The notes under the pieces: model-generated | Seen by the model: only the letters and a program-made list of their open reading frames with translations | What the model was told of the DNA's origin: nothing | Databases searched by the model: none | Part shown: one piece after another, positions 35 to 64,000 of the stretch | Position numbering within the stretch: position 1 is the stretch's first letter | Layout: each line of letters opens with the position of its first letter | Position numbers and translations under genes: made by a program | Assembly: GCF_001194135.2 (NCBI RefSeq) | Contig: NC_068988.1 | Span: forward strand, 78,840,174 to 78,904,173 | Source of the DNA: Octopus bimaculoides | Lineage: Eukaryota | Direction: 5' to 3' | Length of the DNA: 64,000 nucleotides

Positions 35-36
<2 letters not shown>

Positions 37-85
37 CTCTTTTACTTATTTCAGCCATGCGGCCGTGGTCATGCTGGAGCACCAC
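35..85 (-). mobile_element. Tail-only copy of the CR1-like LINE / SINE family A 3' end
   Basis: Reverse complement GTGGTGCTCCAGCATGACCACGGCCGCATGGCTGAAATAAGTAAAAGAGTA aligns to the LINE tail at 3032-3080 and to SINE-A tails; it abuts a (TA)n run. Confidence 0.8.
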
Positions 86-420
86 TATGATCTTTCTTAC
101 TTCCTCAGTCTGTGTGTTTCACAGCACCACTTCTGTATGTGCCTTTGTCCCAGCTGTTGGTACATTTGGTGTATAGTGGAGTTTGATTCTGCTGCAGGGA
201 ATACAGGGAAAATAGATTCCTCTTATAAGGATGAAAACATCCAATTTTTAACTGGATCAACTGTTAAATACCCAATTTAGTAAAGATAAACTTTACAATT
301 CATATTGGTATACATTAGATTTATAAAAATGAAAAGAAAATGGAGATATATAATTGTCAATTAAAAAATTTAAATTTCTTAACATAGCGTTATATTATAT
401 TGATATAATAATATAAATAG

Positions 421-765: not shown

Positions 766-810
<45 letters not shown>
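701..810. repeat. Compound (TA)n-(TG)n microsatellite
   Basis: Read directly from the sequence; it abuts the 5' truncation point of the LINE. Confidence 0.97.
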
Positions 811-812
<2 letters not shown>

Positions 813-3087
813 AAGAAACTCTCAGAATCTTTCCAGCTTGAACTTCCTTAAGGCAAACTGGAAACAAATTGAGAAAGAAGATGCTCAAACAAAACTGGTC
901 TAAATGTCTCTCCTCACCGGACATCGACATGAAACTTCAACAATTCATGTCTGTAATGCAAGCCATATGCTACAAATGTGTCCCGGAGAGAAAGGCCACT
1001 GTAAACAAGAACAAAATCCCCAGGGAGAGGAAAATTCTTATGAGACGGCTTACAAAAGTTTCAAATCGCCTAAACAAACAAATTGAAAGCAGTGAAAAGT
1101 GCCATGAAAAAGAAAGAGCAGACAATGAAGCCTGGGCTATAGACAATATAAAATCTAACCCCAGAGCTCTCTACAAGTTTTCCAAAGCAACAGCTTCAGT
1201 GCACTGCAGGATAGGGCCACTCCTAGAAAAGATGGTACACTCACAGGAAACCCAATGAGGATAAGCGAAATACTAAATGAGCAATTCAAAAGTGTTTTCA
1301 CTCCACCCCTAGGACACTTTCAAGTCAGCAATTCAACTGACTGTTTTACCACTGCAGATATAAAAACAGAGACAATGATGATCGATTACATCAATATAAA
1401 GCAAGACGTTGTAATAAGGGCTATAGATGAAATGAACCCAAACTCAGCTACTGGCCCTGATGGATTCCCAGCAATCCTTCTAAAAGTATGTAAGCGAGTC
1501 CTAGCAAGACCACTGCAGTCCCTCTTTCGCTTCCTTGCATCTGGCATACTCCCAAGAAAACTGAAGGGGGGCAAAATATGTCCTATTCATAAAGGAGGTA
1601 GCAGAGCGGAGGCCAAAAACTACACAGCTACCTCTCTGACGTCGCACATCAGCAAGGTCATGGAACGAATAGTCAGAAGAAAGCTAATCGCCTTCCTTGA
1701 AGAAAATGACTTGCTGCCTGACACCCAATATGGTTTCCGACCAGGAAGTAGCTGCCTGACTCAGCTCTTACAACACTATGACTGGGTGCTGAAACAGCTG
1801 CTCAACCACTCAAATGTGGAAGTGATATATCTCGACTTTGCGAAGGCCTTTGATAAAGTCGATCATGGAATGATAGGTCACAAACTGCGTGATCTCGGTA
1901 TAGCTGGAAAATTGGGAGAATGGCTTCACGACTTTCTGAAGGATAGAAGTCAGGTGGTAGTAGCCAATGGGGCCATCTCCAATGACACGCAAATAGTGAG
2001 CGGTGTTCCGTAAGGCACTGTTTTGGGACCACTACTGTTCATAATGGCCCTCTCAGACATGCCCTCAGCCACACGCAGAGCCACAATCACAAGTTATGCA
2101 GATGATACAAAAGTCTCACAGGTAATACAGAACCCTGAAGACACTATGCGCCTGCAATGTGAGCTGGATGAAATATACAAGTGGGCTGAAAAGAAAGCAT
2201 GCAGTTTAATGTTGAAATGTTTCAAGCCTTGTGCTATCAGCATGTAAAACTAAATGCAATACCCATTAAATACACTGGACTTGGAGGGACTGCAATCCCA
2301 GAGGCACAGTCAGTGCGAGACCTGGGCATTCACATGAGTTATGATGCATCCTTTCATGTGCATGTCGCTAAATTAGCAATGAAATGCAGACGGCTGACCA
2401 GATGGATTCTTAGGACTTTTAGAACAAGAGATCAGGAAACCATGATGGTCCTCTGGAGCACACTTGTCCTAAGCCACTTTTGACTATTGCTCTCTCAGCT
2501 ATGGTCACCAACCAGTGTCGAGTTAATCTCAGAACTTGAGGCAATCCAACGAAGCTACACGAAGATAGCCTCTATGCAGCATATAAGCTATTGGGAAAGA
2601 CTCAAGAGATTAAGATTCTATTCCTTAGAGCGTAGGCGAGAAAGATATGCCATAATATACATCTGGAAGATCCTCGAAGGACTTGTCCCAAACTTTGGCA
2701 TTGAGAGTTACACAAATACTAGAACTGGGTGCCACTGCATAGTGCCAAGAACTCCAAATTTGTCATCAAGATGTGGGACAAGATACTGAAATAGCCTGAG
2801 CTTCAGAGGTCCACAGCTCTTTAATATCCTCCCGAAGAACCTGAGAGACCTGCATGGGGTGGATGTTGGTGTCTTCAACTTAAAGCTGGACCTCTTCCTG
2901 TCAAGTGTCCCAGATGAACCAACTTCGCGGCAGGAGGTGCAAATGAGGGCAGCTGCATCAAACTCTCTGATGCATCAAATGTCAATTCCTTAAAAGCATT
3001 TGTGAAGTAAAATTATGTAGCAACACCAAATGGCGGTGCCCCAGCATGACCACAGCTCATGAGCTGAAACTAGATAAAATGAAATGA
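811..3087 (+). mobile_element. 5'-truncated, inactivated CR1/L2-group LINE (RT pseudogene plus 3' UTR/tail)
   Basis: ORF fragments 869-1258, 1255-2013, 2023-2247, 2199-2483 and 2487-2789 carry RT motifs: SATGPDGFPAILLK, YLDFAKAFDKVDH, SGVP*GTVLGPLLF (TAA at 2011 where Q is expected), YADDTK, VRDLGIHM, SLERRRERYAIIYIWKILEGLVPN. There are several frameshifts and no endonuclease domain. The element ends ...GAGCTGAAACTAGATAAAATGAAATGA. Confidence 0.95.
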
Positions 3088-6600: not shown

Positions 6601-8312
6601 TTAGTGAGATAAATCAGTAAAAAAAATTTGCTTTTTGTCAAATAACTTGTCCCTGTCAAAGGCAAAGTGTTATGAGTGGCTCGTTGTGTCGTTCTGGTAG
6701 CGTCAGCGACTTCTGGCTCTAGTGCTTATTAGTACACAAATATATAAATATTTTAAAATTCCCAGTAGACGACAGGAATTTAGTTCACCAACCTATATGA
6801 CAACAGATACTCACCTAAGGGGGGTCTAACAACGCACTTTCCCAAACTATTTATATTATCCCACTCTTCTCATAAAATAGAGGAGCTATTTTCTTAAACG
6901 GAATCTTATACCGTTTAACAGAAGCTCCAATCTCTACATTTAGCAACATTTATCATGTAATTGATACTGCGAGTTCATCAAATGGAAGTGAAGGCTAAAT
7001 TATTTCTACAAGATCAGTAAAAGTCGGTTGTTTTGCTTTGAATGTTGTGAAATGTCTCTAAATCTGTCTCTTTGGCATTGTGCCGTATAGTAATATTATG
7101 TTCGTGCTGGCACCAAACCTACAATATTCTCCCTACCCTTAAAACTTATAGTTATTTTAATCATACGTTATAAACCGGCTTCCTTTTTTTAAAATTCTTT
7201 TTATATTTTTAGAGAGATCTTTTATCTGAAAGAGTTGAAAGATTGTATTTTGATAGAGATATATTAACGATTTCTTTACAGTATCTACACTATTGTCTAA
7301 TTTTATTGTGTGGTTTTATTCATTTTTGTAAATAACATCAACATTTTACTACATATATTTTATTGATACATCGTCATCATAATGTCACTATCTCTCTCTC
7401 TTCTCTCACTCTCTCTTCTCTCACCCTCTCTTCTCTCACTCTCTATCTTCTCTCTCACTCTCTCTCTCTCTTTCTCTCTCTCTCTCTTCTCTCACTCTCT
7501 CTCGCTCTTCTCTCTCTCTTATTTCCGTCACTTTTGCTTCGTTTCTTTCTTCCTTTCTTCTATGCGCTCTACAACTCCCTCCTCTATCTTTCTCTTAAAT
7601 ACACAGAATTATTTGCGATTTTCTGTGCACCGCAGAGTAAGGTTTGTATCCTGATCTCGCGATGTTTTCAATCTAGTGCACCCTTTACTTCATATATTTA
7701 AAATGATAGCATATAATTTGGAGGAGATTTGGCTGTTGTTTGTAGCAGGTTGAATGAATACCTAAAGCCCCTTCCCCCGTTGTCTCGTGACTTGAATTTA
7801 TATATATTTATCTCAGCTGTACCCGAATTAGACAAATATTTCATAGCTCTTGATAGTTTTGTTCTCTTAAGCTACTAAGGAATTTTACGAAATAATATGC
7901 TAAACTGACGAGGAATTCTGTACGATACTACATACCAGAACCCCGAGGAACGCTAATAATACTAGACTTAAATTCAAAGAAGCAGCATACAAATAGAAAT
8001 ACTGTGTCATACAGTATTCCAACGCGAAGTGTTTTATTATAAACACTGTAGCCCTGCATGACCGCATTCAATTAACTGAAACTAGTAAAAGCAAAACACG
8101 ACATACAGTGCTGATATGTTATGCAGTATAGGAACTATACATATCATAGAATAGAGAAATATGAGTAGAAGATTGAGTAAAAGTAAAACGTCAACTAAGG
8201 TTTTATCGACACTCAAACATTATATTCGTGTCCATTATTAACACGTGAAGGTATTTAGAATCTAAATATACATGTATCCGTTTTGCACAGCTATATATTG
8301 GTTTTAAATTCT

Positions 8313-22271: not shown

Positions 22272-22682
22272 TTTGTTGCAGTTAATTGACTGCAGCCATG
22301 CTGGGGCACCGCCTTGGAGGGTTTTTGTCGAACAAATCGACCTTAGGACTTACTTTTTGAAGCCTAGTACTTATTCTATCGGTCTCTTACAGAACCACTA
22401 AGTTACGGGGACGTAAATACACCATCACCAGTTGTAGACAAACACCAGACACACACACACACACACCAATACACACACAAACACACACACACACACACAC
22501 ATGCGCGCACGGTCGCGCTCGCACGCACACCTATGTACGACAGGCTTCTTTTTTCCGCCTACCAAATCCACTCACAAGGCAAGAGCAGAAGACACTTACC
22601 CAAGGTGCTACGCAGTGAGACTGAACTCAGAGACATGTGATTAAGAAGCTAGCTTCTTACTACACTTCCACGCCTGCGCCTA
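22272..22682 (-). mobile_element. SINE family A, full length, diverged, with internal (CA)n
   Basis: Collinear with 29557-29965: tail CCATGCTGGGGCACCGCC, body GTACTTATTCTATCGGTCTC, head AATCCACTCACAAGGC...CCTGCGCCTA. Confidence 0.88.
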
Positions 22683-25851: not shown

Positions 25852-25853
<2 letters not shown>

Positions 25854-25903
25854 CTCTTTTACTTGTTTCAGTCATTTGACTGCGGCCATGCTGGAGCACC
25901 ACC
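25852..25903 (-). mobile_element. Tail-only SINE family A copy
   Basis: TACTCTTTTACTTGTTTCAGTCATTTGACTGCGGCCATGCTGGAGCACC matches 29563-29611 exactly and is followed by ACC instead of GCC; it abuts (TA)n. Confidence 0.9.
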
Positions 25904-26072
25904 TTTTATAGTTAATTAATAAAATATATATCAGAAAAGAAGCACACTCTAAAGTATAGAGCATTAATTATTACAACAAAATTTTAATTTTGGACATAGA
26001 CTTACTAAAGATTTCGTATCCACAAAGCCAAAGCCTTGTGGACAGCTCATCACACACACACACACACACACA

Positions 26073-28471: not shown

Positions 28472-28801
28472 NNNNNNNNNNNNNNNNNNNNNNNNNNNNN
28501 NNNNNNNNNNNNNNNNNNNNNNNNNNNNNNNNNNNNNNNNNNNNNNNNNNNNNNNNNNNNNNNNNNNNNNNNNNNNNNNNNNNNNNNNNNNNNNNNNNNN
28601 NNNNNNNNNNNNNNNNNNNNNNNNNNNNNNNNNNNNNNNNNNNNNNNNNNNNNNNNNNNNNNNNNNNNNNNNNNNNNNNNNNNNNNNNNNNNNNNNNNNN
28701 NNNNNNNNNNNNNNNNNNNNNNNNNNNNNNNNNNNNNNNNNNNNNNNNNNNNNNNNNNNNNNNNNNNNNNNNNNNNNNNNNNNNNNNNNNNNNNNNNNNN
28801 N

Positions 28802-29556: not shown

Positions 29557-29965
29557 TACTCTTTACTCTTTTACTTGTTTCAGTCATTTGACTGCGGCCA
29601 TGCTGGAGCACCGCCTTTAATCGAGCAAATCGACCCCGGGATTTATTCTTTGTAAGCCTAGTACTTATTAAATCGGTCTCTTTTGCCGAACCGCTATGTG
29701 ACGGGGACATAAACACACAAGCATCGGTTGTCAAGCAATGCTAGGGGGACAAACACAGACACACAAACACATACACACACATATATATATACATATATAC
29801 GACGGGCTTCTTTCAGTTTCCGTCTACCAAATCCACTCACAAGGCTTTGGTCGGCCCGAGGCTATAGTAGAAGACACTTGCCCAAGATGCCACGCAGTGG
29901 GACTGAACCCGGAACTATGTGGTTGGTAAGCAAGCTACTTACCACACAGCCACTCCTGCGCCTAT
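29557..29965 (-). mobile_element. SINE family A, best-preserved full-length copy
   Basis: Reverse complement: ATAGGCGCAGGAGTGGCTGTGTGGTAAG (A-box-like)...CCGGGTTCAGTCCCACTGCG (B-box-like), central TCTTGGGCAAGTGTCTTC domain, internal (TA/TG)n, body, then the LINE-like tail GGCGGTGCTCCAGCATGGCCGCAGTCAAATGACTGAAACAAGTAAAAGAGTA. Confidence 0.93.
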
Positions 29966-30911
29966 ATATATACATATATATATATATACATATATATATN
30001 NNNNNNNNNNNNNNNNNNNNNNNNNNNNNNNNNNNNNNNNNNNNNNNNNNNNNNNNNNNNNNNNNNNNNNNNNNNNNNNNNNNNNNNNNNNNNNNNNNNN
30101 NNNNNNNNNNNNNNNNNNNNNNNNNNNNNNNNNNNNNNNNNNNNNNNNNNNNNNNNNNNNNNNNNNNNNNNNNNNNNNNNNNNNNNNNNNNNNNNNNNNN
30201 NNNNNNNNNNNNNNNNNNNNNNNNNNNNNNNNNNNNNNNNNNNNNNNNNNNNNNNNNNNNNNNNNNNNNNNNNNNNNNNNNNNNNNNNNNNNNNNNNNTA
30301 TATATATATCTGTAATCAGAGAATATGAAGAAGAAATACTGACCCAAATAACTTTCTTTGATCCTAACAAGATGAGATTTGTTTCAGAGAGAGACTTGTA
30401 GGCTTTCCAGAGAGATAAGTATGTTTATCAGACTCAATTATTATATAGTTTAAATAGATTGTTGATGTGCGTGTTTGTGTGTGTATGTGTGCGTGCGTGT
30501 GTGTGCGTGTGTAGGGTGTGTATGTGTGTAAATGTGAGTGTATGTGTATGGTGTGTCTATGTATATATATGTCAAGGATATGGATGTGTGAAACCATTTA
30601 AATGTTCGCAGTGATATTCATGCAGTATTAACATTACGTAGTGAATGTTAGAAACAGGTGTTGTTAACAAAGAACGCTATAAAACTATTTAATTTCTTAA
30701 CAGTTGATCAATAGAAATACGAGATTTTACTAAGGTGTTATTTGTATGACTATAAAATATTGTACATGTAAGACAGTTTTTTGTTTATAACCTAATAATA
30801 AAACAAGTTGGGCGATAAGATGGTAATTAAAATGCAATTATTTGTTTAGCTGAAGTTGTATATATTTCTAAACTTATTATTCGTGTAGTGTAAATTATTC
30901 TTGTTAACAGT

Positions 30912-35836: not shown

Positions 35837-36269
35837 NNNNNNNNNNNNNNNNNNNNNNNNNNNNNNNNNNNNNNNNNNNNNNNNNNNNNNNNNNNNNNNN
35901 NNNNNNNNNNNNNNNNNNNNNNNNNNNNNNNNNNNNNNNNNNNNNNNNNNNNNNNNNNNNNNNNNNNNNNNNNNNNNNNNNNNNNNNNNNNNNNNNNNNN
36001 NNNNNNNNNNNNNNNNNNNNNNNNNNNNNNNNNNNNNNNNNNNNNNNNNNNNNNNNNNNNNNNNNNNNNNNNNNNNNNNNNNNNNNNNNNNNNNNNNNNN
36101 NNNNNNNNNNNNNNNNNNNNNNNNNNNNNNNNNNNNNNNNNNNNNNNNNNNNNNNNNNNNATATATATATATATATATATATATAAATATCGCCAAGCCA
36201 ACATGGCAGTTCAAAAAAATTGGACAAATGCTACCGCTGATTAGCTCCAAGAGGCCATCGCTCTAGCCC

Positions 36270-39200
36270 TGCAGCAGGTCCAGCTTCCGTAGGAAAGGCT
36301 CAAGAATCAAAACGTACAGATGAGAGGAGAGAGGGCACACTTAACGGACCAATCGGAAGAGCTGAATCGGTTCAGAGATGTGGCCATTAATGTTGACTAC
36401 CGAGCAGATGCCGCTGTGCATTGCAGCGATCCAACCTCTGAAGACGGGGCCAAAGCCAGCCGCTTTGGGCAAAGCCTCCAGGTATCGATGCTCGACCCTA
36501 TCGAATGCTTTCGATTAATCTTAATTGATCAGCGCCCCGCCGAAGCCAGGTTTACACCCTACCCTTTCTATGATGTATCGCACGAGGTGGAGGTTGTCTT
36601 GTATGGACGTAGTCGAGATTGCGCAGCTTTGCGCCCTGCGACCAAGTCCTCGACGACAAGCACCAACCACTTTACTAATACCTTGGCCAAAATCTTAAAC
36701 TTTGTATTAAGCAGTGTTATGGGCCTGAAATTATCTAATGTGTCCCTCTTGTTTTCGTCTTTATTTATCAACGTCATTGCGCTCCGGCTCACTGAACTGG
36801 AGATACTCCCGTTCTGCTGCCAGTTGCTGTTAAGCACTTCGAGGAGATTAGAGAACAAGTCTGGCATATTTACGTAAAGTTCATAGGGCAGTCCATCTAA
36901 GCCTGGTGACTTTTGCCACCTGCAACCGACAAGGGGCGTCCTGAATTTCGGCTGAAGTTATTTGCCCTTTGCAGCGCTCAGCCGTCGAGAGATGCGGCAA
37001 GCCGTCGAGGTAGAAACTGATATCCGCCACCGTCTCCGCTCTACCACTTTCTCCGAACAACCGAGCACTACTTAGTAGTGCCACTACTAATTGTCTCGTC
37101 TAGTTTAGCTACTAACTCCTCCTCTTTTCTATTTTTCTAACGCTATTTCTTAGCTAAACCCTATCGATATTACTCTAATCTCTCTTTTGAGAGCTGCCGA
37201 CCACCTGTTGTTGACGACAGCCCCTGTCAAATTCTGCTTAACTAAATTACTGACCCGGTCCCTGTAAGCCATACGTGTCAGAAACATGTTTAGCTTCCAG
37301 TAACCGGGTCCTAGCCTACGCGTCTTATCTATGTTGACTGTACAGATTACAAACTTATGGTCTGAATAGGCGACCGTTTTAAAAAGTGGACATCCTACAC
37401 TGTTACTATCTATTTTTCTAGTGAAAATCCTATCTATATACGATCTAGATGACCCTAAATGGTTGGTCCAGGTCCACACTGGTGCATTAGAGAAATCTCG
37501 TCGGTACTTGCTGATAAGGTGCTTGAGGCTTTTGCACTCCCCTCTTCTATCAGCTACTCCCACACAATCCCAACCTTGATATAAAATTCCGTTCCAGTCC
37601 CCTACTAACAGTAAAGGGCGAGACGTACCTAGAAAGGCCTCCAGACGCCTAAAGAAATCTGGCCGTTTGGTTCCGATCGGAACATAGACGGCCACCAGTC
37701 TAAAGACACTACCTTCACTTTTGCTCACGACCAGGACCACCAACTTTCCGTTCGGGTCCCGAAAGATCGACTTTACTTCGAGATCCAGTTCTTTCCTAAA
37801 CAGCACTGCCACTCCACCTTCCATTCCCGGCCGACTAACAGATGCAGAAATCTGGTAGTTGTCGAACATAGGGGCCAGTACACGTATATTGGAAATCCTG
37901 GCTTCACGGACAGCAATTATATTCAGTTGTAGAGACCTGAGGTTGATGAGCAGGCGTCTCTGCTTCTAGAGTGAACCCAGGCCTCGCACATGTAAAAATC
38001 CTACTCTTAGTATGGCCTATGTTGTCAAGCTAAAGTGAGAAAGCAAAGGTTTACTTATCTCCCGGTGTCTTGTGAAGGTCGGGTGGCTCGACCTCTATAG
38101 TTGTTGGGATCTTTTAGGAAACTCCTTTAAGAGTCTTAATGAGGGTCTCACGTTCGGGGTTCCTACGTCCTCCGGGAAGGTGATGGTATTGTTGTTTCTG
38201 TGTGTGTTGTGAGTGTGCTATCTGCAGTTTTAGATGTCTGTGTAAGTATCTGTTTGGGTTGTTTGCGTTTGGGGGATTCTGATGATAGCGATTGTGTTGG
38301 TTGTGTTTGTGTTAGTATTTGGGGGGGGGGGAAGTCTGCGTGGGTGGTGTTTGTAGTTTTTATCGTGGGTGTTTTTATGCCTTGTGGAGTTTTTCTTTTG
38401 TTGTCACTTTTTTTTCTTTTGTTTTTTGGCCTTTCAGTTTTCCTTCATCTTCACTCCTGGAAGGTGAAGGGTCTGTAACTGTAAGTACGTTTGTGTCAGT
38501 GTGTATGTTTATAATCTTGTTTATGTGTGTATTTTTGTTTGGTGTGAGGGGGGTGGAAGAGTTTTCCTTGTTTTCCCCCCTAGTGTGGTTAATGTCTTTG
38601 GTGTTGTTGCTGGTGGTTTTTCCGGCGCTGGTGATGTTTGTGGTTCTCGTCCCAGCAAAGGCAGTAGTGGAGGCCGTAGGGGGTAGCGAGCACCCAAATG
38701 AGTCGTTTCTCTACACCTGAAACAATTAGGCCTTTTGCCTTCAGTCATGATATGCATCACCGTCTCGTTCTGGGGACTGATGTGGTCTGGGATTTTTTTA
38801 ATGTTTTCGGGTCTGATCTGGAGAAGTATCTCTAGGTCAACCCCTGACCAGTCCTCCTGGCAGTTCTTGTCGCCTCTATAAGGACAGTATCCGTTACCTC
38901 CATGATTACACATCCCAGTAGCCACCAAATATCTAATCCTGGGAAGATTCTAGGAATGCGGACACGGGCTGTACATTTCCCCATGTGGAAGGCGTAAATG
39001 ATGACTTTGCTGGTTTTGCAGGGGCTCATTGAATGTTTCACAGCGAGGGCTTTTGATTTAAACAGCACCGAAATGGTGCTGTATTGTTTGCCCCTCGCTA
39101 TGAATTCCATGTCATTTCTTATGCACCTCAGCGCCGCCTCAGTATCTACTTGGGCTATCAAAGCCGCTCTTTTCGTGTCTGCAACGTTCTTCTCTCCACT

Positions 39201-46574: not shown

Positions 46575-46995
46575 ATTCAAATCTGGCTGTGTAGTAATAA
46601 GGTTGCTTCCTAACGACATGGCTCTGGGTTCAGTCCCACTGCGTGGCTCTTTGGGCAAGTGTCTTTTACTACAGCCTCGTGCCGACCAAGGCCTTGTGAG
46701 CGGATATGGTAAAAAGAAACTGAAAGAATCCCGTCGTATATATATATGTATATAATGTATTTATATATGTGTGTATGTATCTATGTGTCTGTGATTGTAC
46801 ACCCACCACCGCTTGACAACCGCTATTGATGCGTTTACGTCCCTGTGAACTAGCAGTCCGTGAAATGTGTCCGATAGAATGAGTACCAGGCTCTAAAGAA
46901 TAAGTCCTGGGATTGATTTGCTCGACTAAAATCCTTCAAGACAGTAATCCAGCATGCATGGCCACAGTCAAAAATGACTGAAGCAAGTAAAATAT
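46575..46995 (+). mobile_element. SINE family A, full length, diverged
   Basis: TGGCTGTGTAGTAA...GGGTTCAGTCCCACTGCGTGGC, TTGGGCAAGTGTCTT, internal (TA/TG)n, tail CCAGCATG..GGCCACAGTCAAAAATGACTGAAGCAAGTAAAA. Confidence 0.9.
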
Positions 46996-52408: not shown

Positions 52409-52502
<94 letters not shown>

Positions 52503-52608
52503 TTGTTCCTTGTGAGGCTGATGTCTTTTTAAATACAATAATTGCCATGTTTTTCTTATTTCCATATAGTTATAACAGCCAGACACTTCTACTTCCATTA
52601 GCCTTTTC

Positions 52609-52739
52609 TATTATTATCATCATCGTCATCATTATTATTGTTATTATTATTGTTGTTGTTGTTGTTGTTGTTGTTGTTATCATTATCATTATCATTATTA
52701 TCATTATTATCATTATTATTATTATTATTATCATTATTA

Positions 52740-52782
<43 letters not shown>

Positions 52783-52873
52783 TATCATTATTATTATTAT
52801 TATTATTATCATTATTATCATTATTATTATTAGTATTAGTATTATTATCATTATTATTATTATCATTATTATT

Positions 52874-52942
<69 letters not shown>

Positions 52943-52966
52943 GTTATTATTATTGTTATTATTATT
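52609..52966. repeat. Compound (ATT/ATC/GTT/AGT)n trinucleotide array
   Basis: Read directly; it explains the poly-I, poly-L and poly-N pseudo-ORFs. Confidence 0.97.
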
Positions 52967-53514
52967 TGTGTCTTTGAAAAACCCAGATAATCTTTTTTTT
53001 TTATTATTTATTGCTTCATAAATTCTATTTCCATTTACTTTTATGTTTGGATGATGCAAAACTCCTTTTACTTGTTTCTATAGATTCTTTATACAATTCA
53101 ATTTCCACTCTTTATATGTGTATGTATCTATGTACGTATGAAAGCATATAGGTTTGTACATGCGTGTGTCTTCGTGTACACACACACACTCACTCACTCA
53201 TTCACAAACACACACACACTCACTCACACACAAACACGCACACACACATACACACGTACATGCGAACACGGACGCGGGCGCGCACACGCACACATACACA
53301 CACACACATACACACATGCACGCACGCGTTCGCAAACACACACGCGTTTTCAAATTACATTCATTTCTCTGCAACGCATTTCGTGTAATATATTTAGAAT
53401 CTATTTTTTTTACGCAATCTTTTAAAAATATTCATGTATTTGTTTCCCACTTCCAGTAAACTTAAATACATACACGCATACACAGACGTACGCACAAATA
53501 TATACACACTTTCA

Positions 53515-58687: not shown

Positions 58688-59132
58688 CGGTGGTGGTGGT
58701 GGTGGTGGTTTTATTTTACTGTTTACTGCTGTTCTTCTTGTTCCGTGGGGGTGGGTTCTGGGCATTCAATTATTTCCATATATTTACTATGAATATTTAT
58801 ATTTATATTTTTTATACACAATTTTGCAAAACGCAACTCACACCCTCTTTCTTTGTTCTATTGTTTTCATGTGCTTTTTTTTTTCGCTCTTGTGGCAGCA
58901 AATAAAGATGCAACACATCACCCACCACCACCACCACCAGAACTGATATTCTCCTCTCCTCCTCTTCCTCATTATCATTTTGTTTCACCCTGCTGCCGTT
59001 TATATCTATGAACTCCCTCCCCTCCTTCTCAGGCATAAATCATTCTTGTCCTGCATGAACTTCCCTTCTCTCTCATTCACCCCCACACAACTTCCTTTCT
59101 CTTACATACATTTTCTGATGGTTCCTTTTATA

Positions 59133-59564
<432 letters not shown>

Positions 59565-59682
59565 CTCTTGCATCCTTCATAATAACACATTCAACGTCTT
59601 TTGTTTATTACGTGATCAATAAAACGGCGATGCGTTCCACCTCTCAACACCACTAGGCCGAGGCAATCATAGTGATCACGGC

Positions 59683-60884: not shown

Positions 60885-61303
60885 GTATGCATGTATGTAT
60901 GTGTGTGTGTTTCAAAGGAAATACCCAAATAATGCGAAAGTGACCTTCCGACATCAATTGGCTGTCAGGCAACCTTAGCTCAGAATTGTTTTAGTCGCCC
61001 TCTTCCTGAGACCATATTGAGGATTTAGTGACAGACGAAAGAAGTACGAAGAACACCATAGAGTGCAGAAGTAAACAGAATAGCATTGTATACTGAGAGT
61101 AACGAGTAATGGAGTTGATTAAGCGTCTTCTAAGAACCATTATATTACTCCTAATAAAGTTGTTTGTAAAGCGATGCATAAATTATTGAGCAACAACGAT
61201 AGAACTGTAAGCTACCAGTTTATACGTATAAACATTTTCTGTGTACACCTAGTTATATATCTGTATATGCGTATATACATATATACATACATACATACAT
61301 ATA

Positions 61304-61367
61304 TAGGTGCAGGAGTGGCTTGTGGTAAGAAGCCTGCTTGCCAACCACATGTTCCTGGGTTCTGTCC
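61304..61367 (+). mobile_element. SINE family A 5' head, cut by an assembly gap
   Basis: AGGTGCAGGAGTGGCTTGTGGTAAGAAGCCTGCTTGCCAACCACATGTTCCTGGGTTCTGTCC matches the family A head. Confidence 0.85.
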
Positions 61368-64000
61368 NNNNNNNNNNNNNNNNNNNNNNNNNNNNNNNNN
61401 NNNNNNNNNNNNNNNNNNNNNNNNNNNNNNNNNNNNNNNNNNNNNNNNNNNNNNNNNNNNNNNNNNNNNNNNNNNNNNNNNNNNNNNNNNNNNNNNNNNN
61501 NNNNNNNNNNNNNNNNNNNNNNNNNNNNNNNNNNNNNNNNNNNNNNNNNNNNNNNNNNNNNNNNNNNNNNNNNNNNNNNNNNNNNNNNNNNNNNNNNNNN
61601 NNNNNNNNNNNNNNNNNNNNNNNNNNNNNNNNNNNNNNNNNNNNNNNNNNNNNNNNNNNNNNNNNNNNNNNNNNNNNNNNNNNNNNNNNNNNNNNNNNNN
61701 NNNNNNNNNNNNNNNNNNNNNNNNNNNNNNNNNNNNNNNNNNNNNNNNNNNNNNNTCAATATATATTTCAGTATAAAGAATTCATTAAGATGCTTAAATC
61801 AAAATTTCTTTACACATCATTCAGGAACAGATATAACATCAGAAAAAATACATTCCGTTTAAAAACACAAACCGTTCATGGCGAAAAAATTTCACAATAT
61901 ATATATATATATATATATACTCACATGTACACATACATTCATATATCTAGAGAGAAGGAGAGAGAGAAAATGAGTCATTGACAGATATATAATAATTTCC
62001 TTCCTCAAAGTACATGATTTCATAAGTGACTGGCTATTTAGTAGGAAGAGAATTAAAACAGCTACTGGATTTGTTGTAAATGAGATGTTAAATTATATGA
62101 CGTTTGAGTAATTAGTTAAAGCTACCTTCACGCCAGTTTAGTTGAAGAACAAATGCTTCTGGCAAACGTAAAGAAATAAAACATTTTAAATGTTGGTTAC
62201 GTATTCAAATAACATGTTTTTGTATTCTCTTTTATTTTCATTTGTTTCTATAGACTCTAAGGCATAATATTTGAACATCGTTGTCTTCTTTTAGATATTT
62301 TCAAAATGGCTCTTATCACTTCAAAGAAATTAATATATTTTAATTTTTACACTTCAAAGCCATTTTGTTAGTACATGACAATTCATTGACTAGTTAGAGA
62401 GTCTGTTATCACATTTAAATCATCTGTTTATCAGAAATTTAATTTCCTAGAAGCCAAAATACGTTTCTAAAACCAAATCAAACTTGGAAATCAGTAAATC
62501 GATAATTATTTTTACTAGCAACTTCAGATGTCGGTCTGTGATCGGCGTATTTAATGTATAGTTGTCGTTATAGCAATGTGATACTGTTCGCTTCGTTTCT
62601 TACAACTGTGTAGATTATACATTATAACAGTAAATCATACCATTCTGTCTAGTAGGCGCCATGGTACATGATAGCATAATGTCATTGGTTACCCTGCTAA
62701 ATCATATCTGTCATTTGATGCTCTCTTAGAACATATTGTGCCATTCTGCATTATACTATAACGTGGCATTTGGTATAATATCAGTCCATATAAGATAACA
62801 TACAAGATAACACACCATAGCAATCTATTATGCTGATGTTATTTAAGACGATAATAAATAGTGTGTGAAGGCACCTAATAAATAAAATTATGAGCCTAGA
62901 GTATCCGGAATGCGTTAGCATGATAGCTAAATTGATATTTTCTTCTGGTGAGGTTTTCCTAAGCATTATCTTTACCACGGTAACTATATTAATGCATGAA
63001 ATTGAGTGCACATTTCTCCTTCTCACAACCTGGTTAGCTTTTCTGTAGCTTCTTCCCTAACAAACAGAGAGTATATGAATCCCACTGCTATACATGCTCG
63101 ATCATGCATAGTATTCAATTGATGTTAAATGTGTTCTCTCCCAGCCGAAAACCAGTGAATTGACGAAACGTAAATAGACAACAGAAAATGATGCTACCAC
63201 CGACGATAAAAAATGGCTGAATTTGTTTTCAGAGAAAAAAAAAAACGGGAGTAAAAAAGAAAATATAAAAAAAAGAAGTAAAACAGGAGATTCAACTGCA
63301 TATAGTGATATTTTAACGGTGTCAAACAATTTTGTTATTTTGGGAGCTGATTTTAAAATAAGTTTGGCATAAAAGAATTTTTTTCTCTCCAACTGATCTG
63401 AAAGATTGTGAAAATGGAAACTCTATTTTTAAGAATTTGCTGAGAAACTACCTTAGGAACTTACTTCTTAGACTGTAATAGATATGTCATAAGAAGAGAT
63501 ATATGCCTATTTAGGCGACACGAATTAAAAATATATTGCAAAATACGTATTAGAGTTGAGTATGTAGGTGTAAAAGTCAGGATTTCATGAGTATATTCTG
63601 TAGTTTACAATTTATTTTAGTTTTAATTTCCTCATTCTAGAATATTAATTCAAATGAGTAGGTTAGATCTTATTTATAACTGCAAAATGGTTGTGTTAAT
63701 AATTTCGTTTTATAACCTTAGTTCGATCGCACTGCATGTCAGTTTGGGCAAGTGTTATCAATTATAGCGTCGGGTAGTTAATATCTTGAAAGAGACATGC
63801 AGTAAAGTGAGACTGTAAGTGATTTTACCCGTATGTACACCTACATACACGTGTGAGTGTGTGTGTGCATGTAAACAACAGTCATTTGTGCACAATACAA
63901 CGAAAATCGGAAGAAGTGAGATAAATTTAAATATTATAAGGCCCCACTGTGCGTTAAATACGAATCTAGACATTTTTCTATGCTATTGATGTACAGGGAA

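What the first reader, a model, noticed from the sequence alone, without database searches (positions are those of the whole stretch)
3032..3087. LINE and SINE family A share a 3' tail whose stem-loop is kept by compensatory changes: a candidate LINE-SINE partner system
Seen in the sequence: the LINE ends GGCGGTGCcCCAGCATGaCCaCAG-CTCATGAG-CTGAAAC. SINE-A copies (reverse complement of 29557-29614 and 25852-25903; 46955-46990 forward) end GGCGGTGCtCCAGCATGgCCgCAG-TCAAATGA-CTGAAAC. The mismatched middle folds the same way in each. LINE: CAGCT-catg-AGCTG. SINE: CAGTC-aaat-GACTG. Tail-only copy at 35-85: CGGCC-gcat-GGCTG (one G-U). That is three different sequences forming one 5-bp stem with a 4-nt loop, with paired changes on both strands. 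An upstream stem also covaries (GCGG/CCGC vs GTGG/CCAC), although the LINE copy has one mismatch there. Established knowledge: stringent LINEs of the CR1/L2 group recognise a 3' stem-loop, and partner SINEs carry that tail. Inference: this LINE family mobilised SINE-A, and structure rather than loop sequence is the recognition element. I cannot tell whether this particular pair has been published.
Basis: partly seen in the sequence, partly recalled or inferred. Interest (0 to 1): 0.82.

Follow-up and report, generated by a model that had tools for sequence, protein, structure and literature searches.

The report
Octopus SINE borrows a LINE tail
An abundant short octopus retrotransposon ends in the same two-hairpin 3' signal as a family of octopod CR1-like LINEs, which is the ordinary way a SINE borrows a LINE's copying machinery. 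This is a new example of a well-known arrangement, not a new mechanism.

Summary
A 5'-truncated, frameshifted LINE copy lies at window 810-3087. Its last ~55 nt share a conserved tail with a 409-bp tRNA/CORE-type SINE ("SINE-A", 29965-29557 minus strand, plus other copies). I fetched six more LINE lineages of the same clade, from Octopus-like metagenome or read contigs and from Argonauta hians. All carry the tail 7-36 nt after the ORF2 stop (five lineages whose ORF2 end is known).

The tail folds into two hairpins. Hairpin 1 (GGYGGUGCNCCAGCAUGRCC) is almost invariant. Hairpin 2 (CAGNN-loop-NNCUG) keeps its stem while the apex and loop change.

Three base pairs show double (compensatory) changes.

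The claim that this particular LINE family moved SINE-A is not supported. SINE-A's terminal repeat, (AAAGAGTA)n(TA)n, matches a sister LINE family (L123), not the window LINE. No sampled LINE has SINE-A's hairpin-2 apex.

The same phenomenon is published for bivalve CR1/CORE-SINE pairs (PMC4824008). Verdict: a new member of a known kind, of modest interest.

The parts
810..3087 (+). 5'-truncated, decayed copy of an octopod CR1-like LINE. The ORF2 remnant covers the end of the endonuclease/linker region, the RT domain and the C-terminal domain.
   Evidence: It is 91.8% nt identical over 2332 bp to L125, which encodes an intact 1033-aa ORF2 (P0122). tblastn shows the match starts at P0122 residue 284, with frame changes near 866-879, 1228-1231 and 2190-2193. 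There are in-frame stops at 2011-2013, 2481-2483 and 2787-2789. RVT_1 E=1.1e-21.
2996..3031 (+). Non-conserved part of the LINE 3' UTR, between the ORF2 stop (2993-2995) and the tail.
   Evidence: Translation. This stretch is alignable only to the same-family L125 and not to other families.
3032..3051 (+). Tail hairpin 1: GGC.GUGC-CCCA-GCAU.ACC. The window copy has a C-A mismatch at pair 3-18; intact L125 has C-G.
   Evidence: MFE folds, RNAalifold consensus, pair counts. Identity is 92.5% among 6 LINE lineages.
3053..3066 (+). Tail hairpin 2: CAGCU-CAUG-AGCUG, a perfect 14-nt palindrome.
   Evidence: The same sequence occurs in intact L125.
3067..3087 (+). Invariant AAAC followed by the family-specific terminal A-rich short repeats (TAGATAAAATGAAATGA). 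The exact 3' boundary lies between about 3084 and 3095.
   Evidence: The BLAST alignment to L125 runs to 3084, where the L125 contig ends.
29557..29965 (-). Full-length SINE-A (409 bp). Order of parts: tRNA-like head with A- and B-box-like motifs; CORE-type domain (CTTGGGCAAGTG...GAAGCCCGTCG); internal (TA)n(TG)n; about 135 bp of body; LINE-type tail (29615-29577); terminal repeat AAGTAAAAGAGTAAAGAGTA.
   Evidence: CM hit of 62.8 bits.
22273..22682 (-). Older SINE-A copy with the same module order. Its hairpin 2 has decayed (CAGTC-AATT-AACTG).
   Evidence: CM hit of 54.5 bits.
46584..46992 (+). Older SINE-A copy, 5'-truncated by about 13 nt. The tail has indels and hairpin 2 is CAGTC-AAAAAT-GACTG.
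   Evidence: CM hit of 15.9 bits.
25852..25909 (-). Tail-only (5'-truncated) copy with the SINE-A-type tail. It could be a truncated SINE-A or a truncated copy of the unsampled partner LINE.
   Evidence: CM hit of 61.1 bits.
35..86 (-). Tail-only copy of a third tail variant. Hairpin 1 pair 3-18 is U-A, hairpin 2 is CGGCC-GCAU-GGCUG, and the terminal repeat is the SINE-A/L123 type, AAGTAAAAGAGTA(TA)n.
   Evidence: CM hit of 53.2 bits.
8050..8091 (+). Heavily decayed tail fragment.
   Evidence: CM hit of 9.6 bits, E=0.17.
61303..61367 (+). SINE-A head, cut off by an assembly gap (N run 61368-61755).

Best explanation
The window comes from an octopod genome.

The feature at 3032-3087 is the 3' recognition tail of a CR1-like (APE + RT, non-poly(A), repeat-ended) LINE clade found in Octopus-like sequences and in Argonauta. 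SINE-A is a tRNA-headed CORE-type SINE whose last ~55 nt were captured from a member of this clade.

The tail is a bipartite RNA element:
- a nearly invariant hairpin 1;
- a hairpin 2 whose stem is kept by compensatory substitutions while its apex and loop differ between families;
- an invariant AAAC;
- a family-specific short tandem repeat.

Inferred mechanism, by analogy with eel UnaL2 and zebrafish ZfL2: LINE ORF2 protein binds the hairpin(s) on its own transcript and primes reverse transcription on the terminal repeat at a nicked target. The pol III transcript of SINE-A presents the same tail and is copied in trans.

The window's LINE family is a relative of the SINE's partner, not demonstrably the partner itself. 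The best sampled candidate is the L123-type family, which shares SINE-A's terminal repeat.
For: Shown:
1. The LINE copy and its intact relative. The window copy is 91.8% nt identical to L125, which encodes an intact 1033-aa APE+RT ORF2. The tails are identical except for one base.
2. Position of the tail. In five lineages whose ORF2 end is known (window, L125, L123, L001, L124) it begins 7-36 nt after the ORF2 stop. In L122 (Argonauta) it lies 27 nt after the end of the called gene. In L002 (Argonauta) it lies at the 3' end beyond a partial gene call. In every lineage a different short tandem repeat follows it.
3. SINE-A has head + CORE + body + the same tail in three independent full copies.
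4. Structure. The same two hairpins come from MFE folds of every intact tail (z = -1.2 to -4.0) and from RNAalifold.
5. Covariation. 96.2% of cells are paired, against 22-43% when partners are slid by 1-3 columns. Three pairs have changes on both sides: 3-18 (CG/UA/UG), 25-34 (CG to UA in SINE-A) and 26-33 (CG to UA in the window/L125 family). 0 of 500 shuffles reach the observed covariation score.
6. Selection. Hairpin 1 plus the base of hairpin 2 is 92.5% identical and CUGAAAC is 100% identical among six LINE lineages. The ORFs of five of those lineages (L123, L001, L124, L122, L002) are only 66-76% nt identical to the window LINE. The hairpin-2 apex is 45% identical.
7. SINE-A's terminal repeat matches L123 (13 of 14 nt by my own reading of the sequences), not the window LINE.

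From the literature:
- Stringent LINEs recognise a 3' stem-loop, and partner SINEs carry it (PMC3747384, PMC4176376).
- Bivalve CR1-14_CGi shares stem-loop tails with CORE and V SINEs, with compensatory mutations (PMC4824008).
Against: - No experiment shows binding or trans-mobilisation.
- The covariation rests on few independent events: about 3-4 double changes across 7 lineages.
- One LINE lineage (L001/L124) has a C-C mismatch at pair 26-33, so hairpin 2 tolerates a 4-bp stem.
- The shuffle control does not correct for relatedness.
- No LINE with SINE-A's exact hairpin-2 apex (CAGUC-AAAU-GACUG) was found. The octopus genome itself could not be scanned.
- CR1-clade placement was not tested by phylogeny.
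- ARAGORN and Rfam do not call the SINE head a tRNA. The tRNA origin rests on A- and B-box-like motifs and on the published description of octopus CORE-SINEs.
Confidence: 0.8

Rival explanations
1. The window's own LINE family (window copy / L125) is the direct partner that mobilised SINE-A.
For: The two share hairpin 1, the base of hairpin 2 and AAAC. Identity is 82.7% over 52 nt, about the same overall as L123 at 83%. An intact ORF2 exists for this family.
Against: The terminal repeats differ: TAGATAAAATGAAA against AAGTAAAAGAGTA(TA)n. In UnaL2-type LINEs the terminal repeat matters for priming. The hairpin-2 apex and loop also differ at 7 of 14 positions. L123 and the tail-only copy at 86-35 carry SINE-A's terminal repeat.
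Confidence: 0.15
2. SINE-A is mobilised promiscuously by several families of this LINE clade through the invariant hairpin 1 and AAAC. On this view hairpin 2 is only a structural spacer whose sequence is free to drift.
For: Hairpin 1 and CUGAAAC are near-invariant across all families and the SINE, while the apex is free to vary. SINE-A's apex matches no sampled LINE.
Against: Stringent LINEs tested so far (ZfL2-1 and ZfL2-2) discriminate between cognate and non-cognate loops (PMC4176376). Terminal repeats are family-specific here. Sampling of Octopus LINE families was very thin.
Confidence: 0.25
3. The conserved tail serves the LINE mRNA itself (3'-end formation, stability or export) rather than recognition by the reverse transcriptase. 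The SINE would then keep it for a reason other than RT capture.
For: Nothing here measures protein binding. The element lies at the very 3' end of the transcript.
Against: A pol III SINE has no need for pol II 3'-end signals. Independent capture and retention of LINE tails by SINEs is explained by RT recognition in every tested case (PMC3747384, PMC4176376). 5'-truncated tail-only copies (86-35, 25909-25852) show that reverse transcription starts at this end.
Confidence: 0.05
4. The apparent covariation is a chance by-product of a hypervariable, palindrome-prone segment, with no selected RNA structure.
For: There are few independent events. All 11 tails even show complementary first and last loop bases (pair 27-32), which for 4-nt loops cannot be a real RNA pair. 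This hints at a palindrome-generating DNA process. One lineage has a broken pair.
Against: In one search, pair 25-34 is a standard pair in all 11 tails and pair 26-33 in 8 of 11. The breaks are the L001/L124 C-C mismatch and one decayed SINE-A copy. Both C-to-U changes are matched by G-to-A at exactly the pairing partner, and both are fixed in families with an intact ORF2 or many copies. Slid-partner controls fall to 22-43% paired. More distant LINEs (L126, L130) have unrelated sequences with the same two-hairpin layout.
Confidence: 0.05

Closest known systems
Bivalve CR1-14_CGi LINE with BivaV-SINE2 / BivaCORE-SINE1 (Nishihara et al. 2016, PMC4824008); also Vhc_1 SINEs with CR1-1_CGi / CR1-14_CGi (PMC4758252)
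   Same: A mollusc CR1-type LINE and tRNA-derived CORE (or V) SINEs share a 3' tail. The tail folds into conserved stem-loops with compensatory mutations between SINE and LINE.
   Different: The host is a different class (Cephalopoda: Octopoda). The tail sequences could not be compared because the figures are not held. Here several LINE families could be compared, showing an invariant hairpin 1 next to a variable hairpin 2.
Eel UnaL2 / UnaSINE1 and zebrafish ZfL2-1 / ZfL2-2, stringent L2-clade LINEs (PMC4176376; PMC3747384)
   Same: A conserved 3' stem-loop is followed by short non-poly(A) tandem repeats. A CORE-SINE partner carries the same tail. In these fish elements, ORF2 recognition of the stem-loop is shown experimentally.
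   Different: No experiment exists for the octopod element. It has two hairpins rather than the single studied one. The clade (CR1 or L2) is unresolved. The sequences are unrelated.
Octopus CORE-SINEs OR1 / OR2 (Ohshima and Okada 1994, cited in PMC4824008 and PMC4758252)
   Same: A tRNA-derived octopus SINE with a CORE domain. SINE-A is probably this family or a close relative.
   Different: I could not compare sequences, because the 1994 paper and the SINEBase files are not held. The two citing papers disagree on whether OR1 or OR2 is the CORE-SINE. No octopus entry appears in the 2013 table of SINE/LINE pairs.
Tortoise Pol III/SINE with CR1 (Ohshima et al. 1996, as cited in PMC4824008); SINE/LINE common tails reviewed in PMC3747384
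   Same: This is the founding example that SINE 3' ends derive from LINE 3' ends. CR1 and RTE clades are the commonest donors.
   Different: The hosts are vertebrates and the tail sequences are unrelated.

Membership tests
Stringent-type non-LTR retrotransposon of the CR1/L2 group (Jockey superfamily) | ORF2 with an APE endonuclease plus reverse transcriptase and no RNase H domain | tested here: met
   P0122 and P0001 hit Exo_endo_phos, Exo_endo_phos_2 and RVT_1 and nothing else. The window remnant hits RVT_1.
Stringent-type non-LTR retrotransposon of the CR1/L2 group (Jockey superfamily) | 3' end without poly(A), ending in short family-specific tandem repeats | tested here: met
   (AATTA)n in L001, (ACAAGAT)n in L002, (ATTAAAAC)n in L122, (AAAGAGTA)n(TA)n in L123, and A-rich AAATG-type repeats in the window and L125.
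Stringent-type non-LTR retrotransposon of the CR1/L2 group (Jockey superfamily) | Conserved stem-loop in the 3' UTR close to the terminus | tested here: met
   Two hairpins are predicted in all intact tails, with covariation at 3 pairs.
Stringent-type non-LTR retrotransposon of the CR1/L2 group (Jockey superfamily) | RT phylogeny places the element inside the CR1 (or L2) clade | not tested
   No labelled reference LINE sequences were available in the tools, and homologues carry no clade names.
Stringent-type non-LTR retrotransposon of the CR1/L2 group (Jockey superfamily) | The 3' tail is required for retrotransposition and is bound by ORF2 protein | not testable with these tools
   This needs a reporter assay or a binding assay.
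tRNA-derived CORE-SINE | tRNA-like head with pol III A and B boxes | tested here: inconclusive
   TGGCTGTGTGG matches the A-box consensus at 10 of 11 positions. GGTTCAGTCCC matches the B-box consensus at 9 of 11. The spacing is about 35 nt. All three counts are my own reading, against consensus sequences from my own knowledge. ARAGORN and Rfam call no tRNA.
tRNA-derived CORE-SINE | CORE central domain | tested here: inconclusive
   The CCTTGGG motif named as CORE-conserved in PMC5786205 is present in the 22.6-kb copy and in the Argonauta copies (ACCTTGGGTAAGTG). It appears as TCTTGGGCAAGTG in the young copy. No CORE consensus was available for a formal alignment.
tRNA-derived CORE-SINE | Short, non-coding, dispersed in many copies | tested here: met
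   The element is 409 bp. The window holds 3 full copies, 1 gap-truncated copy and several tail-only copies in 64 kb. Related head+CORE copies occur 7 times in 43 kb of Argonauta sequence.
LINE-SINE partner pair (window LINE family with SINE-A) | Homologous 3' tail | tested here: met
   82.7% identity over 52 nt, the same two hairpins, and the same AAAC.
LINE-SINE partner pair (window LINE family with SINE-A) | Same terminal repeat / priming end | tested here: not met
   The window and L125 end in TAGATAAAATGAAA. SINE-A ends in AAGTAAAAGAGTA(TA)n. L123 does match SINE-A.
LINE-SINE partner pair (window LINE family with SINE-A) | Overlapping periods of activity | tested here: inconclusive
   The LINE copy is 8% diverged from an intact relative of unknown species. 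SINE-A copies range from near-identical tails (29.6 kb against 25.9 kb) to about 73-85% identity. There are too few copies for age profiles.
LINE-SINE partner pair (window LINE family with SINE-A) | Trans-mobilisation of the SINE by the LINE's ORF2 protein | not testable with these tools
   This needs a retrotransposition assay.

The most novel reading that the evidence does not exclude
The octopod CR1-like clade may use a two-part 3' address. An invariant, sequence-read hairpin 1 would be common to all families. A fast-evolving hairpin-2 apex plus terminal repeat would set family specificity and would co-evolve with the variable EN-RT linker of ORF2. SINE-A carries an apex found in no sampled LINE. 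It therefore either tracks an unsampled or extinct master LINE, or has evolved its own tail while staying mobilisable through hairpin 1. The second case would be a SINE that escapes strict one-to-one partnership within a stringent LINE clade.
Probability: 0.25. Interest if true: 0.45.

Novelty: new member of a known kind. Interest (0 to 1): 0.25.

Why it matters
SINEs are a major component of octopus genomes and are enriched in brain transcripts (PMC9115989). Knowing which LINE clade supplies their reverse transcriptase tells us which autonomous elements drove that expansion.

The set of sister LINE families described here has one invariant hairpin, one covarying hairpin and family-specific terminal repeats. 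That makes it a convenient natural series for dissecting how stringent LINE proteins read their tails.

Conceptually nothing is new. Shared LINE/SINE tails with compensatory stem changes have been textbook since the 1990s and are already reported for mollusc CR1/CORE-SINE pairs.

Tried and rejected
- **Metagenome DNA scan.** The pattern GGTGCYCCAGCATGRCC returned 119 loci. All were chance matches in GC-rich bacterial contigs. None had the downstream hairpin + CTGAAAC in a LINE context.
- **Rfam.** No family matches the tail or the SINE, either at gathering thresholds for the whole window or at E<=10 for the two regions.
- **ARAGORN.** It finds no tRNA in the window.
- **Full-text search for the SINE/tail sequences.** 0 papers.
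- **Papers and files not held.** Ohshima and Okada 1994, Ohshima 1996 and Albertin 2015 are not held. SINEBase supplements are not held.
Rejected. By reading alignment A1, its variable pair is C-A in the window, L125, L123 and L124 and C-C in L002. The register GGY/RCC pairs in all intact tails.
- **More distant relatives (41-50% aa): L126, L127, L128, L129, L130, L131.** They lack the tail sequence. The motif is therefore specific to an octopod clade among what was sampled.
- **Search for a LINE with SINE-A's exact tail.** Three protein searches and 12 contig look-ups found none. The first search also missed P0122, the closest intact relative of the window copy, so these searches are not exhaustive.
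- **SINE-A body against LINE sequence.** No similarity beyond the tail. The body is not obviously LINE-derived.
- **Sliding identity of ORF2.** The EN-RT linker is the least conserved part (32-42%), with one conserved island. This is compatible with a tail-binding region, but linkers are generally variable, so I give it little weight.
Full report
**Observation**

- The LINE tail at 3032-3087 reads GGCGGTGCCCCAGCATGACCACAGCTCATGAGCTGAAAC, followed by TAGATAAAATGAAATGA.
- The SINE-A tails at 29615-29557 (-) and 25903-25852 (-) read GG(C/T)GGTGCTCCAGCATGGCCGCAGTCAAATGACTGAAAC, followed by AAGTAAAAGAGTA.
- The tail-only copy at 86-35 (-) has the stem CGGCC-GCAT-GGCTG.
- I found two further copies: 22313-22273 (-) and a decayed one at 8050-8091.

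A 35-nt degenerate pattern gives 5 matches in the window against 0.00 expected from shuffles.

**What the LINE is**

The region 810-3087 (+) is a 5'-truncated, decayed non-LTR retrotransposon.

- The conceptual ORF2 changes frame three times and carries three in-frame stops.
- It ends at a stop codon at 2993-2995 and hits RVT_1.
- Its nearest relatives are an intact 1033-aa ORF2 (P0122, locus L125 from a Logan read assembly), ORFs on ENA metagenome contigs, and two Argonauta hians proteins. The window copy is 91.8% nt identical to L125 over 2332 bp.
- The window is therefore octopod DNA. It is AT-rich (33% GC), has many assembly gaps and is full of (TA)n and (TG)n repeats.
- Intact relatives have APE + RT and no RNase H.
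- All end in short family-specific tandem repeats rather than poly(A).

This is the CR1/L2-group layout. I did not place the element phylogenetically.

**The tail is a real LINE 3' end, conserved across families**

I fetched six further LINE lineages.

| Locus | Source | Hairpin 2 and terminal repeat |
|---|---|---|
| L125 | same family as the window copy | CAGCT-CATG-AGCTG, then TAGATAAAATGAAA |
| L123 | 75.6% nt identical to the window LINE | CAGCC-TGCG-GGCTG, then AGAGTAAAAGAGTA(TA)n |
| L001 | metagenome contig | CAGCC-CTAG-CGCTG, then (AATTA)n |
| L124 | metagenome contig | CAGCC-TTCG-CGCTG |
| L002 | Argonauta hians | CAGCC-GGCAAT-GGCTG, then (ACAAGAT)n |
| L122 | Argonauta hians | CAGCC-GACTC-GGCTG, then (ATTAAAAC)n |

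- In the five lineages whose ORF2 end is known (window, L125, L123, L001, L124) the conserved block starts 7-36 nt after the ORF2 stop. In L122 it lies 27 nt after the end of the called gene. In L002 the gene call is partial and the tail lies further downstream.
- The UTR before the block is not alignable between families.
- Among these six lineages, hairpin 1 plus the base of hairpin 2 is 92.5% identical and CTGAAAC is 100% identical. The hairpin-2 apex is only 45% identical.
- The ORFs of five of the six (all except same-family L125) are 66-76% nt identical to the window LINE.
- More distant LINEs (41-50% aa identity; L126-L131) lack the sequence.

This rules out an independent mini-repeat. 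It also rules out a SINE fragment lying next to the LINE by accident.

**Structure and covariation**

Every intact tail folds into the same two hairpins: (((.((((....)))).))).(((((....))))). RNAalifold returns the same consensus.

Results on the 11-sequence alignment A1:

- 96.2% of cells form standard pairs, against 22-43% when the partners are slid by 1-3 columns.
- Three pairs have changes on both sides:
  - 3-18 (CG 6, UA 2, UG 2);
  - 25-34 (CG 8, UA 3; the UA is SINE-A);
  - 26-33 (CG 6, UA 2; the UA is the window/L125 family).
- 0 of 500 shuffles reach the observed covariation score.

Both hairpin-2 changes are fixed at family level. L125 has an intact ORF2 and the same stem as the window copy. 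All five SINE-A-type copies derive from CAGTC/GACTG.

Caveats:

- There are only about 3-4 independent compensatory events.
- The L001/L124 lineage has a C-C mismatch at pair 26-33.
- The shuffle control ignores relatedness.

Read off alignment A1, its variable pair is C-A or C-C in intact LINEs.

**What SINE-A is**

The full copy (29965-29557, minus strand, 409 bp) consists of, in order:

- a tRNA-like head with A- and B-box-like motifs;
- a CORE-type domain (CTTGGGCAAGTG...GAAGCCCGTCG);
- an internal (TA)n(TG)n;
- about 135 bp of body;
- the LINE-type tail.

Three copies in the window share this order. Octopus CORE-SINEs (OR1/OR2) have been known since 1994 (cited in PMC4824008 and PMC4758252). 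I could not compare sequences with them.

Argonauta has SINEs with the same head + CORE but a different body and tail, ending in (ATTTAC)n. This shows the usual swapping of 3' modules.

**Which LINE is the partner?**

- SINE-A's terminal repeat, AAGTAAAAGAGTA(TA)n, matches L123's AGAGTAAAAGAGTA(TA)n.
- It does not match the window LINE's TAGATAAAATGAAA.
- SINE-A's hairpin-2 apex (CAGTC-AAAT-GACTG) matches no sampled LINE.

The window LINE family is therefore a relative of the partner and is not shown to be the partner. The L123 type is the best sampled candidate. The exact master may be unsampled.

**Mechanism (inferred)**

By analogy with UnaL2 and ZfL2, ORF2 protein would bind the 3' stem-loop and prime on the terminal repeat, and the SINE transcript would mimic that tail (PMC3747384). 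In the zebrafish elements the region between EN and RT binds the stem-loop, and the loop gives specificity (PMC4176376).

The near-invariance of hairpin 1 suggests sequence-specific reading there. The variable apex and terminal repeat may set family specificity.

In these ORF2s the EN-RT linker is the least conserved part, with one conserved island. This is weak and merely compatible evidence.

**Comparison with the known, and novelty**

Nishihara et al. 2016 describe bivalve CORE and V SINEs that share stem-loop tails with CR1-14_CGi, with compensatory mutations. The same is established for the eel, the zebrafish and the tortoise.

The 2013 table of SINE/LINE pairs has no octopus entry. I found no open paper on this pair. 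Repbase and Dfam could not be checked.

Verdict: a real, correctly seen feature. It is a new member of a well-known kind, and the specific partner assignment is unproven. Interest 0.25.

Noticed in passing
window 29775-29800, 22440-22535, 46737-46790 (internal); flanks of every SINE-A copy; N runs at 28472-28801, 30000-30298, 35837-36160, 61368-61755: [quoted passage not shown] Every copy and every tail-only fragment is also flanked by (TA)n or (TG)n. Several assembly gaps are bordered by (TA)n, and one cuts a SINE-A head. This suggests either that the element seeds microsatellites or that it prefers them as targets.
   Followed up: partly
L002 75-375, 12781-12480 (-), 13789-13490 (-), 15033-15330, 15399-15700; L122 1517-1815, 16313-16070 (-): Argonauta hians has an abundant SINE with the same partial head + CORE as octopus SINE-A (83-90% identity over 113 nt). 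After ...GAAGCCCGTCG it has a completely different body and a tail ending in (ATTTAC)n. The 3' module, and presumably the LINE partner, was exchanged between the two octopod lineages.
   Followed up: partly
alignment A1, columns 27 and 32 (window 3058/3061 in the LINE copy): In all 11 tails the first and last loop bases of hairpin 2 are complementary (CG, AU, UG, GU, GC). Three tetraloops are perfect palindromes (CATG, CTAG, AATT), and the window LINE hairpin is a perfect 14-nt palindrome. With 4-nt loops this cannot be an intramolecular pair. The cause is unexplained; it could be intermolecular pairing or a DNA-level effect.
   Followed up: no
L130 3256-3340; L126 3373-3450: Two more distant LINEs (41-43% aa identity) have unrelated tail sequences but the same layout: a GG-opened hairpin with an internal loop, then a short second hairpin, then AAAC/CAAC, then tandem repeats ((AAACT)n and (ACAAATAT)n). 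The two-hairpin architecture may be older than the octopod sequence motif.
   Followed up: partly
window 37150-37869 (-), 38521-38928 (-): A fragment of a second, unrelated non-LTR element. One ORF has an Exo_endo_phos (APE) domain (E=1.3e-9). An upstream ORF contains a cysteine-rich CFRC...H stretch that looks like a gag/ORF1 zinc knuckle but has no Pfam hit.
   Followed up: partly
window 63721-63774 (+): An old, diverged CORE-like fragment (78% identity to SINE-A positions 58-111) without a recognisable SINE-A body or tail. It probably comes from another or older CORE-SINE family.
   Followed up: no
window 52500-53000 and 59100-59580: Long A/T-rich trinucleotide-type arrays, read as poly-Ile or poly-Asn ORFs. 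Together with abundant (TG)n, (TA)n, (TATG)n and (CT)n tracts they make up much of the window.
   Followed up: no
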